This document shows positions 8,216 through 22,900 of a DNA stretch of 64,000 nt, in pieces. Each line of letters begins with the position of its first letter. The first letter of the stretch is position 1. Source of the DNA: Dimorphilus gyrociliatus (Eukaryota; Animalia; Annelida); NCBI GenBank assembly GCA_904063045.1, contig CAJFCJ010000012.1, forward strand, positions 1,860,001 through 1,924,000. The letters are read 5' to 3'. The notes beneath the pieces were generated by a model, which saw nothing but the letters and a program-made list of their open reading frames with translations, had not been told where the DNA came from and did no database searches. Position numbers and translations under genes: made by a program.

Positions 8216-9296
8216 ATGGTAAATTGTTTTATACTTTAATCCATAGCTAATCATATTTAAAAGAAACTTAATAGAGTGGGCGATAAAAGGATATATTTTA
8301 CTATCTTTTCAGTCTTCTCAGTCCCGAGTTATAAAACTGGGCGATCAAAGTACTTTTGTTCAAATATCAAACGGTAAAATACTGCAAGAGAATGGTCAGA
8401 ATGTTTATTACGTCCTTGGAGATGAACAAGTCGAGGAGATTGAACAAAATACTCAAGAAGAGACCGAATATGTAATAATGACAAATCAACAAGGAGACAA
8501 CGAATCCTTAGCATTACAGCAATTAGATGTTGCTGAAAATTGTGTAGTTGATTCAACAGATACGATACGAGTAAGCATTCTACCTCCAGAGTGTCATGTG
8601 CCCTCATCCGAAATTATATCGTTGGAAAACAAAGCTCAAGAAGAAAAGGAGGAGAAAGAATCGAGTTCATTTAATACAGTTGCTGAAGAAGTTACAATTG
8701 GAAGGATTGGTACACCGTATTCGTATTCAAAGAAAAAAATGCTGCAACCAGGTCCTACCGCAGTATCAGATGTAGAAATTATTACTTGCCCAACCGTAGC
8801 AGTAAAAACAGGTTAATTATTATTTTAAATACTATAAATAAATAAAAACTTTTAATAATTAATTGTTGTGTCATAATTTAATGAATTTCAGAAAGTAGAA
8901 TGGCATTCGAAAGAAGTAATATACCCATTCACGCACCAAAATATGTTTGGCAATGTGAACAGTGTACTGCGTTAATGGAAAACGAAGCAGAATACAAGAA
9001 TCACATAACATCTTGCGACGAAATGATAGAAATTAATAACGATACAAGGTAAAACAATGTAAAGCCTACTTGGAACCTTTGAAAATAAATTTTTTTTCAG
9101 GTTTATATGCCCAAGGTGCCAAAATACATTTAAACGATTGCCAAGCCTACATTTTCACCTTGATCGAATACATTCTATGATCGTACAACATCCTCAAACA
9201 AATAATGTCCCCGAAACAGACGAAATGTCGTTTGATAATGGTCAAGAGGACGAAGACGTTGATGATGCTGAATTAAGTGACGAAGACAATAGTTAG
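8216..9296 (+). CDS. Acidic protein with a C2HC-like and a C2H2 zinc finger; first exon probably ATG only (8216-8218)
   Basis: ATG|GTAAAT at 8216 and an acceptor at 8312 are in frame with ORF 8478. Later exons encode WQCEQC..HITSC and FICPRCQNTFKRLPSLHFHLDRIH; TAG at 9294-9296. Confidence 0.75.
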
Positions 9297-16925: not shown

Positions 16926-19900
16926 ATGGAGGTGCTGACAGCATTTGGAGATGTTTCTGATCATTTTAGTCAATTAGACTTTGATAAAATAATTTCTGTA
17001 AGTTCTATTATCTAAATTATTATCCATAAATCTGAACATGAAATAGTGGATTAACAGCAAATAACAGTCATCGATTGTCAATTAATATTAAATATCTCCC
17101 TTCCAGGATTGGACAGACTCTGTAGACAATTCTGAAAGCTTTAACGAAAAATTACGAAATTACATCAAAAACAACATTCTTAAAGTACTTCATCCTAGTC
17201 CTGAGTGTGATCTAAATGTTGAAGAGCCTAAAATTGATACGTACTTCTTTAAACTTTTCGAGGTTTTCATTTGTGGTAATAAGGAGACAGAGAAAACTTT
17301 CAACGAACTAAAAAACCTCGACAGTCCGTCCGTTATTTGTGGCAAAGTCTTTAAAACAGGAGAGCCTGTATATTCCTGCAGGTTTGTGTCTATAGCATAA
17401 ATAAAGCGAGACAAATACTTTGACAGTTAAAAAATATTTTCAGAGACTGCAGTGTCGATCCAGCTTGTGTGTTATGTATCAAATGCTTTAACAGCAGTAT
17501 TCACAAAAAACATCATTATAAGGTAAGTTACTTATGTTTTTTTTTTTATTAATATAATATGATCATGTGAAAATTAAGATAACTGCATCTTCGGGTTGTG
17601 GTTATTGTGATTGTGGCGATCCAGAAGCCTGGAAAGATGGAGTATATTGTTCGCTGCACGAGCCAAAACTAAAGTCTGATTCAAATAAGGTGTGCCCTAG
17701 ACTTTGACCATACTCTATAGTATTTTCATTTTGAATGTATTGTTAATTATATAGCCACTCGCAATGGATAACTTGCCTGAAGAAGTAAAAAAACGAGCTA
17801 CAGCTATATTTCTCTTCCTGTCAAATTATATACTTGAAATTTTGACTATAAAAGAAAACGATTGCCTTCCAGAACGTTATCAAGCTCTTGCTAAGAGTGA
17901 AAACTTTGTAACAATGTTGTATAATGATGAAATCCATACATATGAGCAAGTAAGAGCGCTAATTATGATCCAAGTCCATTTATTGTTTTAATAAATATTT
18001 TCACGACATAGGTAATAAGTGCTCTAATGAAGTCAATCAAGTGCGAGCAGAAGAGAGCCGTAGATATCGCTACGTTTGTTGATAAAGAGGGAAGGGCAGC
18101 TATATCCTTCGGCCCAAAAGCTAATTGTCTCCGTCTGAAAGAAGAAATTGAAAAAACTACAGCTAGATCTACTGGTCAAGGCTCAATTCAACCATCCCTA
18201 CTGGTTTGTCATATTATAAAAGATAAAGAACGGAAAGATATATATACATGTTTTTTTAAAACAGGTAAAAGTTATTCATAATTCAATTGTTGCTCATCAA
18301 ATGTTTGCAATGAGAGCACTCTCGTGGTTTCTAAACATTGCTGGAAAATCAGGTACAGCAATTGAAATTGAAGTAGTTTTTGTTAACAATGGAAACTATT
18401 GTTTTTATTTTCTATTAAAAGATGGACTGCTCCATTTGTTCTGCTCTCTATCAATGACCTCACCCGTAACGTATCCTAATGCAACGGAAACAATTATTGA
18501 AGAAAGTATGTTGGCCGATACTGATCTATGGAAAGGTAGTTCTTCCGTTATAAATATGTAAAAGTAATGGCTAACTAAACATTATTTATCTCCAATTGCT
18601 AGGCGCTAGACTTCTTTGCCACGAATTATTTATGACTGGTATTTTGAAAAATATTGACCTTAAACATAAATTTAGTAAAATTTTTGTAAAGGTAAGTAAA
18701 TTTCTAAATCGCTTAAATTCTTTGTATTGTCCAGTAGTTGTTAATTTAGTGTGAAATTTTTGTATATATAAAAATATTCTTAAAAAGTAGAGTATATCAA
18801 AGAGGGTTTGCGGTAAATGTGTTTCAGCATTATGCGAAAGTACAGAGAAACAATACTCGCGATGATCATGAACCCAACGTCTGTATAGCTACAGAGAGCG
18901 TGCAAATATTTACAGTACCGAGTCTGGTAAGTGACATTCTCAAGTCTATTCTTTTTTCAGGTATATCCAAGACTGTGTGCTGATTTTGTTATGGACGATC
19001 ATCATCGTTCCGTATCAACAATGAACTTTAGCGTTCAATTGCTGACAGTTTCCACTTTGGTAAAAAAAGATATCTTTCTTTCCCAAATAAATAAGCATCC
19101 TTCTTTTTTAAAGTTATTTTTTTTTTATATTGTTAATACAAACAAATTCATGTTCTTTAAGGCAAGGATGCTAATTCGAGAGGACAACGTTCTTGAAATT
19201 GTGTTAAAGTCTTTCATAGAAGAATGCAAGCATAAATTAAGTAATTTTCTTTTTAAATTACTGTCTCCTAGTTTTTACACTAATCAAATTTTTTGTGTTT
19301 CCCTATTCAGAAGACGACAAATTTAATTTTGATCGTAATGATAGAAGCTCAAGTAATAATGGACAACTAAGATATCGAAGAGCATTGTATATACTATACG
19401 ATGTTAAATACTTGCTCATAACTGTTCCTTCGGAGGACGAATGGGACAGTGCATTTTGTCAAAATTTTATCAATGGCCTAAACTATCTTCTTGACTTGCT
19501 ATCTTATTTACATGTATGTTTTTTTTTTTTGCTATCTTTGAAAATTTCTTATATAAGCTATACTTTTTGTAATAATTTTCTCCTTTTTTCTGGAAAAAAG
19601 GGTGTTGACTCAGTTAAACGACAAACTGGTGCACATATTGAATATGAAAGTGAATGGGAAGGAGCTTTTGGCTTACAAATCAAATTGTCTGATATCTTTG
19701 GGCCTTTTCTGGAATGGTGTAGCGTCAAAGTAATTTATTAAATTTTTTCTATATCATTCTTTGATTGTAAAAGCTTTTAATTTTACAATAACTTCCAGAC
19801 TTGCGTTCTTGAGGAAGCCTTTAAGAGAACTGTAAACTTAATTGAATCACAGAAAAATACACCATCAGTAGTCTGGAAAACAATCCCTCTTCAAGGTTTT

Positions 19901-22900
19901 CATTAATAAAATCCTGTTTATATATTGAAATTATATTTGTTACTTTATTATTTCAGTCGCCGGGTTCGAAGACGAGATTCACGTTGTTGATTACGATGTT
20001 TCAACGCATAAAGTGTCAGTCCATATTGCTTTACATAGATTTCTAGCAGGTTTGTACAACAATATATTTCTATACTTGTGCATAATGTTTTGAACTGAGT
20101 TACTTATTGCAAAATGTAGGTCTTTGTCCCGGCCTAAACGCCTACAATATCACGTTAACAGAATTATTAAGTCGGTCCGAATCAAGAGTAAGTAAACTTT
20201 GGTGTCATTTATTAATTTTGATTAGAATATACATTCTAATTGACTCTTTCTTTGTGTTTATAGCCTGGCTTATGCGATAGTGTTAAATCCAGAATTGCAT
20301 TACTCCTAGATCCAGTGCTTAGAGTGCAAGTACTAATTGCACAACATAGAGCTGGAATGTGGAGGAGGAATGGATTTTCTTTAATTAATCAAGTATGTTA
20401 AAACATCAAAGAAAGATTAAATTTATGTTAAATTCTTTTAGATATACTTCTATAGAAATGTTCGATGCCGAACTGAAATGCAAGATAAAGATGTTATTCT
20501 TGTACAAAAAATTGCTGCTGGTATTAGATACATATATTTTTTTATTTCGTTTTGCTTTGAAGTCTAACAATTTTACAGAGTTACCTCCAAATGAGTTCTT
20601 AGCTCACTGCCTAAACAAATACGGTTTACTTAATTGGATAAAGTACGATTTTTAATTAGTTTTTACACCAATATATAATTATTTTTAATCTTATATTTTA
20701 GACAAGAGTACGATGATGTAAGAACAGCACCAAGCGAAGACAGAGTTGTTCAAACCAGTGTTATTGCTGAAGAGTTTTTTATATTAATTCTGACTATTTT
20801 AAGTAAGTAAAATTTATTATCTCATTACACGTTGTTAAACATTTTTTTAAAGGCGAAAGATTTACTCCGAATATGGGTTGCGTTGATAAAAAAGACTCTA
20901 TTAAGCGAGAAATAATACATTTACTATGTTCTGGACCATTGTCTCATTCAGAATTGTGTAAAAGTTTGGTTGAAGATGTACGTTTCAATATTTGTTCCAT
21001 AAATAAAATATATACACTAATAAAATTATTCTTATATTTTTCAGATCTGCAATATGACAGAATTAGAATCTATCGTTTTGGAAGTTGCAGATAAAAAGTA
21101 AGTTAAATATAATATATATTTTTACCCACAAGTATTTAATTAGAATATTTCAGTCTTACCGTATATAAGATAATTTTTTTATTAGTGAGACTTTATGATA
21201 ACTTAATTAATATAAAATACTGAAAAGTTTATCAACTTTTTAAGGTTTTAAATCAAAGTAATAAGTAAAATATAGCTGTTTCGATATAACTAAAAAAGTA
21301 TTCCTTATGGAAATTAGGATAGTCTCACGTTAAGTTTCAAACATACATGTAATCATTTAATGCTATAGTTGAAAGAAAGTGTATATATTTATATTGAATC
21401 AATCATTTGTGTTTCTACATCCATTAAGGAAAATATCTTCCGGTAAAATCGAGTATTGTTTGAAGCAAGAATATTATGATTGGTACAATCCATTCTTCTA
21501 TCATTATGGCAAAACGGAACAAACTAAGGTAAATATGACTCCTACCACATAGAATAGTATAGATTTCTCTCTATATATTATTGTCTGTTATAAGTTTATC
21601 ATACGATTTCTATATTATATATAAATTATCTATACATATTGCAGTCGGAGCAAAGGCAGCTAAAGAGAAGAAAAGAGGCAAATGAAGAAGAATGTAAGAT
21701 TATACTCAATATATACTGTATATAATTTATACAAATTATATCTGTTCTTTCCACTTTCAACAGGTTTACCTCCACCTAAACCGCCCAAATTTCACAAAAA
21801 TATGGAGAGTATTCTTGAGCTTCTAAAATGTGATGTTATGATTTATTTGCAAAAACTTGTATTGGAGAGAATGGAAGCAAAGAGATCTAGATCAGCATCT
21901 GAAAATCAACTGCACATTGTTCTTCACCTTATTGCTTTAAGTTTATATGAAGAAGAGAATGCCCATAATGATGGAAAATGTTTTGGATATGTGAAAAAGG
22001 CCGTATCTGGTAAAAAATAAATTAAACAAATACTTATACTGAATATACAAAAATCTATTATTTTTTTTTTAGAACCATCATCAATTTATCAATTACTTAA
22101 GAAGTTATTAGATTCACCAAACGTAAAGTCACCACCAATGAGGAGTCTTTTAACATTTGTTTTTAAGGTTTTTTTCAAAAAGCGTATTTCGAAAAGCTTG
22201 AACTAATGACTGAAAATTCAATTCTTTTCGTTAGAAATTCATCATTGTTCGTCACTTGGTAGATTCATCAATTGGCTCAAAGATAGATAAAGATCTCGAA
22301 AGATTTCTTAGCCAGAGCGACAAAGAAAAAACCGAACAGAAAAAGAAGGCTGACATTGCAGCGAAACGTAGAAGAAGAATATTGGAACAAATGAATAAAA
22401 GACAAAAAGAATTTATTCAGTCCAACATTGAGTTATTTCGAAAAACTAAATCAGGTTCACAAGATGAAATTATGGAAACAGATACTTTGTTAGTTTCTTT
22501 TTTTTTTTATTTTAATGAAATTTCCATCTAATAATACTATTAAATCTTTAGAACTACGGATTCAGAAACTTTTCACGTAGCCCTTGGCGATGACAGGACC
22601 CACATAACTTCTCCTGTTTCTGTTGTGCGAAAAATTTGCATTCTATGTCAAGAGGAACAAGACATATCGATCTCATCGAAAAAACCAATGGTTCTTTGCT
22701 CTTATGTTCAAAAGTCGACTGTTTTATCTCAAAACCGAACCAAATGCGTTCAAAAAATAGGCGCATATTACGAATCCGTATTCTTTCCTGCAGATTTAAT
22801 ATTAGGAACGCACGTGAGCACGTGTGGTCATGTGATGCACGCCGATTGCTGGCAAAAGTATGCAGTTACATTCTCATATTTATTTAAATTTAAAAACTTA

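What the first reader, a model, noticed from the sequence alone, without database searches (positions are those of the whole stretch)
18828..19059. Mutually exclusive exon pair in the N-recognin UBR1/2, likely enforced by a 34-nt spacer
Two phase-0 exons of exactly 99 nt encode homologous 33-aa peptides sharing Y..DDH....SVQ..TV..L. Each fits between ..KFSKIFVK (ends 18691) and ARMLIRED.. (starts 19162). The spacer (18927-18960) is 34 nt, well below the shortest introns I could confidently place here (52-56 nt), which points to steric exclusion. Retaining the spacer frameshifts into a TGA. From memory, vertebrate UBR2 has two alternative versions of this same segment (..[22 protein letters not shown] / ..DDHERAVSVTALSVQFFTAPTL); exon A ends identically in [10 protein letters not shown]. 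If that holds, the switch may predate the protostome-deuterostome split and mark an unexplored regulatory surface of the N-degron pathway.
Basis: partly seen in the sequence, partly recalled or inferred. Interest (0 to 1): 0.78.

Follow-up and report, generated by a model that had tools for sequence, protein, structure and literature searches.

The report
Either/or exon pair in worm UBR ligase
The worm's single UBR1/2-type "N-recognin" ubiquitin ligase gene carries two old, interchangeable copies of one 99-base exon only 34 bases apart, too close to be spliced to each other; this is a clean new example of a known exon lock, and the pair is shared with molluscs, brachiopods and ribbon worms but probably arose separately from the similar pair in vertebrate UBR2.

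Summary
Observation confirmed. Exons A (18828-18926) and B (18961-19059) are both 99 nt, phase 0, AG..GT-bounded and homologous. They lie 34 nt apart in the genome's only UBR1/2-type gene.

They are not a local oddity. A matches the first (alpha) and B the second (beta, "DDHxR") exon of a tandem pair. I found that pair, in the same order, in Owenia, Tubulanus, Lingula and many molluscs. NCBI annotates isoforms there that differ only in this 33-aa segment.

The spacer is 53-461 nt in those species and 34 nt here. That is 15 nt below the shortest of 25 RNA-confirmed introns of this gene.

RNA contigs show:
- an A-only mRNA;
- an abundant form (about 40% in one data set) that keeps A, the unspliced spacer and B, and hits a TGA;
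- no spacer excision;
- no B-only junction.

So the size lock is supported, but productive use of B here is inferred, not shown.

The vertebrate UBR2 pair is real and already published. The two fish exons group with each other. Starfish, acorn worm, sea squirt and horseshoe crab have one copy. A pre-bilaterian origin is therefore not supported, though a 33-column alignment cannot exclude it.

The scan noted the same kind of short-spacer pair in this genome's ATE1 and troponin T genes. This is a new member of a known kind.

The parts
17444..17687 (+). Two exons (17444-17522, 17579-17687) encoding the UBR box of the gene
   Evidence: Pfam zf-UBR scores 26.8 and 26.0 bits (cut-off 25.2) for the two exons taken singly. 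Both are spliced in RNA contigs.
17753..18203 (+). Two exons (17753-17949, 18012-18203) encoding the ClpS-like N-domain (type-2 N-degron site)
   Evidence: Pfam ClpS scores 35.1 bits (cut-off 23) for the second exon. The first exon occurs only once in the 77.9-Mb genome, so there is a single UBR1/2 gene.
18603..18691 (+). Constitutive upstream exon (..[29 protein letters not shown]), donor AAG|gtaagt
   Evidence: X3 bin depth fits full coverage of this exon and none of the intron behind it.
18692..18827 (+). Intron upstream of A (136 nt), removed in all contigs
   Evidence: X3 record 9 and X1 record 3 run from 18691 into 18828 (length arithmetic).
18828..18926 (+). Exon A: alpha-type copy, 33 aa [33 protein letters not shown]. 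The default exon in the RNA seen.
   Evidence: X1 A-only contig; X3 main contig. It groups with Owenia, Lineus and Tubulanus alpha exons (80/93) or with mollusc alpha exons (97/90*).
18927..18960 (+). 34-nt spacer GTAAGTGACATTCTCAAGTCTATTCTTTTTTCAG. It carries A's donor, B's polypyrimidine tract and acceptor, and a candidate branch A at 18942, 16 nt from the donor. It is too short to be excised.
   Evidence: It is 15 nt shorter than the shortest of 25 RNA-confirmed introns of the gene. It is retained in X3 record 10, and that contig is not broken at 18961, so no excised form is present. The branch point is inferred from the sequence only.
18961..19059 (+). Exon B: beta-type copy, 33 aa [33 protein letters not shown]
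   Evidence: R16 ('DDHxR') is present in all 13 other lophotrochozoan beta exons and in none of the 14 other alpha-type exons listed. It groups with Owenia and Lingula beta exons (88/88; 97/92* beta clade). The related strain X2 lists no difference in B but 5 substitutions and 1 indel in the next intron.
18981..18983 (+). TGA reached when A, spacer and B are all kept (frameshift +1)
   Evidence: Translation; coordinates.
19060..19161 (+). Intron downstream of B (102 nt). With 18927-19059 it forms the 235-nt intron removed in A-only mRNA.
   Evidence: X3 record 10 joins 19059 to 19162. X1 record 3 joins 18926 to 19162.
19162..19240 (+). Constitutive downstream exon ([26 protein letters not shown])

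Best explanation
A and B are this annelid's copies of an old, lophotrochozoan-wide tandem pair of alternative 99-nt exons: alpha first, beta second. The exon encodes a helical hairpin of the UBR1/2 N-recognin, residues about 395-427 in human numbering. It lies just behind the ClpS-like type-2 N-degron domain and holds the family's invariant DDH and SVQ motifs.

In relatives the intron between the two copies is 53-461 nt. In this compact genome it has shrunk to 34 nt. A's 5' splice site and B's branch point and acceptor therefore lie within about 16-34 nt of each other, and the spacer cannot be spliced out.

Three products are possible:
- upstream exon > A, then A donor > 19162: A-only, productive, the main form seen;
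- upstream exon > B, then B donor > 19162: B-only, productive, expected from relatives but not seen in the contigs available;
- upstream exon > A, then B donor > 19162: a dead end that keeps the spacer, shifts the frame and stops at TGA 18981. It is abundant in one RNA data set.

An in-frame A+B protein cannot be made. Exclusivity at the protein level is enforced by spacer length plus the frameshift.

Shown: the anatomy, the homology, the orthology to annotated alternative exons elsewhere, the retention and non-excision of the spacer, and the A-only mRNA. Inferred: the steric cause, the branch-point position, the existence of B-only mRNA in this species, and NMD of the dead-end form.
For: Anatomy and significance.

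Gene identity: UBR box and ClpS exons, PDB UBR1/UBR2 residues 395-427, single copy in the genome.

Orthologous pairs:
- Isoforms that differ only in this segment exist in Owenia, Mizuhopecten, Mytilus, Saccostrea, Liolophura, Lingula and Physella.
- Genomic pairs of two 99-nt AG..GT exons, alpha then beta, lie in Owenia (spacer 280), Mizuhopecten (461), Lingula (402) and Tubulanus (53).
- More molluscs, including cephalopods, show one or the other type.

Placement: B falls in the beta clade (97/92*) and A in an alpha clade (97/90*). With more rows, A sits with the annelid and nemertean alpha exons (80/93) and B with Owenia_b and Lingula_b (88/88). R16 is diagnostic.

Spacer too short: 25 RNA-confirmed introns measure 49-331 nt, median 67. 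There is a C. elegans precedent: 14- and 30-nt inter-exon introns are never excised and the minimum intron is about 40 nt (PMC4165533).

RNA:
- X1 record 3 (618 nt) leaves 269 letters between 18533 and 19311. That equals 2+89+99+79, so exactly one 99-nt exon. Bin depths 2.73 and 1.06 place it on A.
- X3 record 9 (1490 nt) runs unbroken through 18691>18828 to the end of A.
- X3 record 10 (190 nt, depth 147) is 18898-19059 read straight through, then 19162-19189. It is bounded by the branch at A's donor and the merge at 19162, and is not broken at 18961.
- Depth arithmetic gives about 204 for A>19162 against 147 for A-spacer-B>19162, so about 42% retained.
- No other intron of the gene shows read-through depth.

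Constraint on B: intact frame and splice sites, beta-specific residues kept, and no listed difference in strain X2 against 6 in the adjacent 102-nt intron.
Against: - No contig shows the 18691>18961 junction. In X3 the contig graph has no branch at the upstream donor and none at B's acceptor, so B-only mRNA is below Logan's contig threshold there (perhaps under 10-20%).
- Contigs drop rare variants. Thirteen joints and 54 contig pieces were not printed.
- B has changed two strongly conserved residues (F28>L, P31>S).
- The AU test does not formally reject A and B being sisters (p = 0.095 and 0.073).
- Pairwise scores are noisy: A is closer to alpha in 8 of 11 species and B closer to beta in 6 of 11.
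- The minimum intron size was measured on 25 introns of one gene, not genome-wide.
- The steric cause itself was not tested.
Confidence: 0.68

Rival explanations
1. In this species B is no longer an alternative coding exon. Its donor (19059|19060) acts as a competing 5' splice site that extends exon A by 133 nt into a frameshift and stop. This would be unproductive splicing that tunes the level of full-length UBR, or yields a RING-less N-terminal fragment.
For: B is seen only as A+spacer+B, at about 42% of transcripts in X3. No branch exists at the upstream donor or at B's acceptor. B has lost the conserved F28 and P31. The B-donor intron (102 nt) is nearer the species' preferred intron size than the A-donor intron (235 nt).
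Against: B keeps an exact 99-nt open frame, AG/GT boundaries, a strong polypyrimidine acceptor that a mere donor extension would not need, and the beta-diagnostic DDHxR and SVQ..TV..L residues. It sits with the beta exons in both trees. No difference is listed in B in strain X2. The orthologous beta exon is used as a coding alternative in many relatives.
Confidence: 0.22
2. One reading: the A/B switch and the vertebrate UBR2 switch descend from one duplication older than the protostome-deuterostome split.
For: The exon, phase and 99-nt length are the same in fish (Gadus L007 8402-8500 and 8596-8694). All vertebrate copies and the lophotrochozoan beta exons share DDHxR. AU tests do not reject alpha+vertebrate-2nd, beta+vertebrate-1st or beta+all-vertebrate groupings (p = 0.18-0.25).
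Against: The fish 1st and 2nd exons form their own clade (96/80*). The ..VPSL-type exon is first in lophotrochozoans and second in fish. Single copies lie in the Asterias, Ptychodera, Styela and Limulus loci. Only one version appears in about 100 arthropod, echinoderm, hemichordate, amphioxus and fish UBR1 proteins. At least four independent losses would be needed, against two gains.
Confidence: 0.12
3. B is a decaying pseudo-exon and the similarity has no present function.
For: No B-only RNA was seen. B has a long branch (1.27-1.28).
Against: A has an equally long branch (1.03-1.13). The pair is several hundred million years old, yet B retains its frame, length, splice sites and class-specific residues. 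B's donor is heavily used. B is conserved between strains while the neighbouring intron is not.
Confidence: 0.05

Closest known systems
Vertebrate UBR2 mutually exclusive exons (two 33-aa versions of residues about 395-427; validated by qPCR in CHO cells, bioRxiv 10.1101/863175; annotated in Gadus isoforms X1/X2)
   Same: The same gene family and the same exon. Both copies are 99 nt and phase 0, in tandem, with a short inter-exon intron (95 nt in Gadus). Isoforms differ only in this segment.
   Different: Probably a separate duplication: the fish exons group together, the order of the ..PSL-type copy is inverted, and the intermediate phyla are single-copy. The vertebrate spacer is long enough to be an intron. 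Any steric lock there would need a distant branch point, which the pyrimidine-rich Gadus spacer hints at (inference).
Alpha/beta exon pair of UBR2-like genes in other Lophotrochozoa (NCBI isoforms X1/X2 of Owenia, Lingula, Mizuhopecten, Mytilus, Saccostrea, Liolophura, Physella, Octopus)
   Same: Orthologous: same order, same length, and the same diagnostic residues (alpha DDHDH.., beta DDHxR..).
   Different: Their spacers are 53-461 nt and so in principle spliceable. Physella even has annotated isoforms with both exons in frame. Here the spacer is 34 nt and double inclusion is only possible as a frameshifted retention product.
C. elegans mutually exclusive exons with too-short intervening introns (egl-15 5B/5A 14 nt, let-2 9/10 30 nt, bet-2, gly-5, gly-6; PMC4165533); steric interference in mammalian alpha-tropomyosin and OGDH (PMC7969005)
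   Same: Exon lengths are multiples of three, so NMD alone cannot police double inclusion. The intron between them is below the species' minimum size, and no mRNA has that intron excised.
   Different: Here a large share of steady-state RNA is the dead-end product that keeps the short intron. The species' minimum intron (about 49 nt in this gene) is higher than in C. elegans (about 40 nt).
ATE1 and troponin T exon pairs of the same genome (scan notes s1-080898, s1-080851)
   Same: The same genome and the same design: homologous tandem exons 28 nt apart. ATE1 belongs to the same Arg/N-degron pathway.
   Different: Different genes. These are unchecked notes that I did not re-test.

Membership tests
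[quoted passage not shown] | UBR box zinc finger | tested here: met
   Exons 17445-17522 and 17579-17686 each pass Pfam zf-UBR (26.8 and 26.0 bits, cut-off 25.2).
[quoted passage not shown] | ClpS-like N-domain, which separates UBR1/2 from UBR3-7 | tested here: met
   Exon 18012-18203 scores 35.1 bits on Pfam ClpS, cut-off 23. The best full-length relatives are named UBR2 or UBR1.
[quoted passage not shown] | RING-H2 and the C-terminal UBLC/PRT6_C domain in the same gene | tested here: inconclusive
RING-like CxxC...CGHxMHxxC motifs are visible in the frame translation downstream.
Mutually exclusive exon cluster from tandem exon duplication | Adjacent exons of equal length, the same phase, homologous sequence, each fitting both flanking exons | tested here: met
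Mutually exclusive exon cluster from tandem exon duplication | Each exon is found alone in mature mRNA | tested here: inconclusive
   A alone: yes (X1 record 3 and the X3 junction contig). B alone: not seen in three runs of contigs. It is seen in annotated isoforms of relatives.
Mutually exclusive exon cluster from tandem exon duplication | The two exons are never joined to each other in productive mRNA | tested here: met
   No 18926>18961 path exists in X3's contig graph. The only form with both exons keeps the spacer and is frameshifted. Limited to contigs of three runs.
Sterically / size-locked exclusive exons (intervening intron too short) | The intervening intron is shorter than the species' smallest spliceable intron | tested here: met
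   34 nt against 49-331 nt for 25 RNA-confirmed introns of the same gene. The published median for D. gyrociliatus is 66 (10.1101/2020.05.07.078311). No genome-wide minimum was measured.
Sterically / size-locked exclusive exons (intervening intron too short) | Lengthening the spacer permits A-B splicing (causal test) | not testable with these tools
   Needs a minigene or genome edit.
   The fish exons group together (96/80*). Asterias, Ptychodera, Styela and Limulus have a single copy. AU tests lack the power to exclude it.

The most novel reading that the evidence does not exclude
The same 33-aa helical hairpin of UBR1/2 (DDH...SVQ.FTVP, directly behind the type-2 N-degron domain) was duplicated into an either/or exon pair twice independently: once in the lophotrochozoan stem and once in vertebrate UBR2. 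Both pairs have been kept for hundreds of millions of years. [quoted passage not shown]

In the compact Dimorphilus genome the lock has become absolute. Its by-product, a retained-spacer mRNA making up about 40% of steady-state transcripts, may itself down-tune the ligase or encode a RING-less decoy that holds the UBR box and ClpS domain.
Probability: 0.45. Interest if true: 0.62.

Novelty: new member of a known kind. Interest (0 to 1): 0.48.

Why it matters
For splicing: this is a natural case where genome compaction shrank the intron between two alternative exons from hundreds of bases to 34. An in-frame 'both exons' option, still annotated in a snail, became a frameshifted dead end. RNA data show that dead end at a high level. 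It gives a compact, testable model of the size lock outside nematodes.

For the N-degron field: no paper I could find addresses what the two UBR2 exon versions do. The same segment is alternatively encoded across molluscs, annelids, brachiopods and nemerteans, and probably independently in vertebrates. That argues the hairpin next to the type-2 site has two useful states worth comparing biochemically.

It does not change what is known about mechanism. The pairs in other species are already present, without comment, in automatic annotations.

Tried and rejected
- **RNA structure (docking/selector) as the lock.** Folding 18692-19161 gives z = -1.37. The inverted repeats are AT-rich and short. 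No support.
- **Recent local duplication.** A and B are less alike (score 44) than either is to human UBR1/2 (75-77), and each sits with foreign exons. Rejected, although AU gives only p = 0.07-0.10.
- **A second UBR1/2 gene or other copies of the exon in the genome.** None found.
- **Count of the 13 unprinted joints as evidence against a B-only junction.** I can account for 12 of them, so I did not use the count.
- **X2 record 6 begins at 18960, one base before B.** This could mark a branch at B's acceptor. At depth 2, and one base off the expected branch, it is only a hint.
- **Hatje et al. 2017 human MXE catalogue (PMC5740500).** UBR2 is absent from the text and from the 11 supplements held.
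- **JBS mutation L427R recalled from memory.** No paper found; dropped.
- **The search for related loci with exon B.** With exon 19313-19513 there were no metagenome relatives.
- **The worm's own annotated protein.** It did not appear in either protein word search, so the annotators' isoforms could not be read.
- **Lineus and Branchiostoma loci.** Their gene ranges are too long to fetch.
- **Structure.** The AlphaFold model of Owenia residues 91-721 (pLDDT 83, matches yeast Ubr1 7MEX with TMq 0.70) gives only the secondary structure of the segment: helix, DDH loop, helix, turn. No contacts.
- **Joined models.** No joined (spliced) model of the window's gene and no junction string was built or searched.
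Full report
**1. The observation**

The sequence is as described.
- Exon A is 18828-18926 and exon B is 18961-19059. Each is 99 nt, opens after cag and closes before gt.
- Each is in phase 0 with the upstream exon (ends 18691, ..KFSKIFVK) and the downstream exon (starts 19162, ARMLIRED..).
- The peptides [33 protein letters not shown] and [33 protein letters not shown] share 11 of 33 residues.
- Their ungapped BLOSUM62 score of 44 is the best non-self match among 22,086 stop-free 33-mers in all six frames of the window (next best 28). None of 100,000 shuffles reached it.
- The spacer 18927-18960 is 34 nt, GT..AG. Reading through it gives 18 codons and then TGA at 18981-18983.

**2. The gene and the organism**

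- Upstream exons taken singly pass Pfam's UBR-box and ClpS thresholds.
- Both A and B align end to end with residues 395-427 of solved full-length UBR1 (9wbw_A) and UBR2 (9wbv_A).
- The genome (77.9 Mb, 349 contigs) holds the ClpS exon and exon A once each, so this is the only UBR1/2-type gene.
- Earlier scan notes name the genome Dimorphilus gyrociliatus. So does the median of 67 nt for 25 RNA-confirmed introns, against the published median of 66 (10.1101/2020.05.07.078311). I treat the name as likely, not proven.

**3. RNA evidence** (contigs only, one call allowed)

Three runs hold the gene: X1 (coral metatranscriptome), X2 (marine metatranscriptome, a slightly diverged strain) and X3 (organism A, spliced throughout).

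- *A-only form.* X1 record 3 (618 nt) has 269 letters between its pieces ending at 18533 and starting at 19311. That equals 2+89+99+79, which is exactly one 99-nt exon. The bin depths (2.73 and 1.06 at contig depth 5.45) place it on A with nothing on B.
- *No branch at the upstream donor.* X3 record 9 (1490 nt, depth 323) has 392 letters after 18202. That equals 1+88+114+89+99+1. It therefore runs unbroken through 18691>18828 and stops at A's donor, a branch point.
- *Retained spacer.* X3 record 10 (190 nt, depth 147) is 18898-19059 read straight through the spacer, then 19162-19189.
  - Its two ends are exactly where a k=31 unitig must end if A's donor is either used (to 19162) or read through, and if B>19162 merges with A>19162.
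  - It is not broken at 18961. So neither an 18691>18961 path nor an 18926>18961 path enters B in that contig graph.
- *Proportions.* The bin totals (267.1 and 175.0) are reproduced with an A>19162 junction contig of depth about 204. Roughly 58% of transcripts are A-only and 42% are A+spacer+B.
- *Specificity.* The same arithmetic shows zero read-through in the neighbouring introns, so the retention is specific to the spacer and is not pre-mRNA or DNA.
- *Strain X2.* X2 record 6 covers B, the next intron and the next exon unspliced. Its five listed substitutions and one insertion all lie in the 102-nt intron (19116-19152) and none is listed in B. At most one unlisted difference sits near a contig end.

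Contigs drop rare forms, and part of the tables was not printed. Absence of a B-only junction therefore means 'minor at best in these samples', not 'absent'.

**4. Is 34 nt too short?**

- The 25 introns of this gene confirmed by spliced contigs measure 49-331 nt.
- In C. elegans, introns of 14 and 30 nt between exclusive exons are never excised, and the minimum intron there is about 40 nt (PMC4165533).
- In humans, a donor-to-branch distance under 50 nt is the accepted steric criterion (PMC5740500).
- Here the only plausible branch A inside the spacer (CTCAAG, 18942) is 16 nt from A's donor. That position is inferred from the sequence.
- No competing RNA structure stands out.

**5. Relatives**

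A search with the ClpS exon, followed by two word searches, gave about 300 UBR1/2 proteins.

- *Isoform pairs.* Pairs of equal length that differ only in this 33-aa segment are annotated in the annelid Owenia, the brachiopod Lingula, the bivalves Mizuhopecten, Mytilus and Saccostrea, the chiton Liolophura and the snail Physella. Cephalopods and other gastropods show one or the other type.
- *Genomic loci.* Each holds two 99-nt AG..GT exons in tandem:

  | Species | Locus | Spacer (nt) |
  |---|---|---|
  | Owenia | L003 | 280 |
  | Mizuhopecten | L004 | 461 |
  | Lingula | L011 | 402 |
  | Tubulanus (second exon not annotated) | L010 | 53 |

- *Two classes.* The first copy (alpha) reads DDHDH.. 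and the second (beta) reads DDHxR.. in every case. Dimorphilus A has P and B has R at that position.
- *Trees of the 33 columns.*
  - B falls in the beta clade (97/92*) and A in a mollusc alpha clade (97/90*).
  - With more rows, A sits with Owenia, Lineus and Tubulanus alpha exons (80/93), and B with Owenia_b and Lingula_b (88/88).
  - Forcing A and B together costs 16-20 log-likelihood units, but AU gives only p = 0.095 and 0.073.
  - Pairwise scores alone are noisy.

Taken with the conserved order and the diagnostic residue, I judge A = alpha and B = beta to be well supported. The pair is then at least as old as the common ancestor of annelids, molluscs, brachiopods and nemerteans.

**6. 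Vertebrates and the deep claim**

Both versions exist (9wbv_A; P0021). The CHO-cell study validated the Ubr2 exclusive pair and noted 33 aa with 19 identities (10.1101/863175).
- In Gadus the two exons are 8402-8500 and 8596-8694: 99 nt each, 95 nt apart.

Four results argue against a single early duplication:
- The two fish exon classes are each other's nearest relatives (96/80*), apart from fish UBR1 and from all invertebrate exons.
- The ..VPSL-type copy is first in lophotrochozoans and second in fish.
- The loci of a starfish, an acorn worm, a sea squirt and a horseshoe crab contain one copy only.
- All arthropod, echinoderm, hemichordate, amphioxus and fish UBR1 proteins seen carry one version.

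Two gains are more parsimonious than one gain and at least four losses. AU tests cannot reject the deep groupings (p = 0.18-0.25), so I put that reading at about 0.12.

**7. Where the segment sits**

- In Owenia the segment (391-423) follows the ClpS domain (218-297) and precedes the winged-helix domain (773-870).
- An AlphaFold model of residues 91-721 (pLDDT 83) matches yeast Ubr1 (7MEX, TMq 0.70). It shows helix, DDH loop, helix, turn for the segment.
- The H of DDH and the Q of SVQ are invariant in 52 aligned proteins.
- By the yeast description this is the helical scaffold between 'Ubr-Box2' and the winged-helix domain (10.1101/2021.04.12.439291).
- Contacts could not be read with these tools.

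**8. Verdict**

- This is a real, ancient, selectively kept exon pair.
- The lock by spacer length is the best explanation for why A and B cannot be joined. The retained-spacer transcript is its visible by-product.
- Productive use of B in this worm remains to be shown.
- The mechanism and the vertebrate counterpart are known, and the same design was noted by this scan in ATE1 and troponin T of the same genome.
- New, as far as I could find, are the lophotrochozoan-wide conservation of the UBR alpha/beta pair, its likely independence from the vertebrate pair, and the effect of genome compaction on the outcome of choosing both exons.

**9. Left out by rule**

I built no joined coding sequence of the window's gene and searched no exon-junction string.

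Noticed in passing
L010:2953-3051 (Tubulanus polymorphus UBR2-like locus): An unannotated second (beta-type, DDHSR) 99-nt exon with AG/GT boundaries lies 53 nt after the annotated one. This whole 1762-aa gene spans only 9.4 kb.
   Followed up: partly
L007:8501-8595 (Gadus chalcogrammus UBR2): The 95-nt intron between the two fish exons is almost pure pyrimidine behind GTGAGTAAC. That suggests a distant branch point next to the 5' splice site, the classical steric design.
   Followed up: no
P0087, P0217, P0154, P0203/P0133, P0132, P0113: Gene models of Pinctada, Mercenaria, Mytilus edulis, Physella and the fishes Enoplosus and Lota read both exon copies in tandem (+33 aa). Most are probably annotation errors. 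Physella also has separate alpha-only and beta-only isoforms.
   Followed up: partly
L003, L004, L007, L010, L011 and window 18692-19161: In five of six genomes the intron between the two copies is the shortest of the three introns around the pair. Lingula is the exception.
   Followed up: partly
P0127 / P0199 (Antedon mediterranea), residues 781-796: Two equal-length isoforms differ in a second short segment inside the winged-helix region. This may be another alternative exon pair of the family.
   Followed up: no
window 18927-19059 in run X3: About 42% of steady-state transcripts keep the 34-nt spacer and carry a premature stop, while no other intron of the gene shows any read-through. That is a high level for a presumed NMD target.
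   Followed up: partly
window 20520-20584 in run X2: The related strain X2 has 5 other letters (AGCTT) at the 20519/20578 exon junction region. This is a small indel or an alternative splice site in that strain.
   Followed up: no
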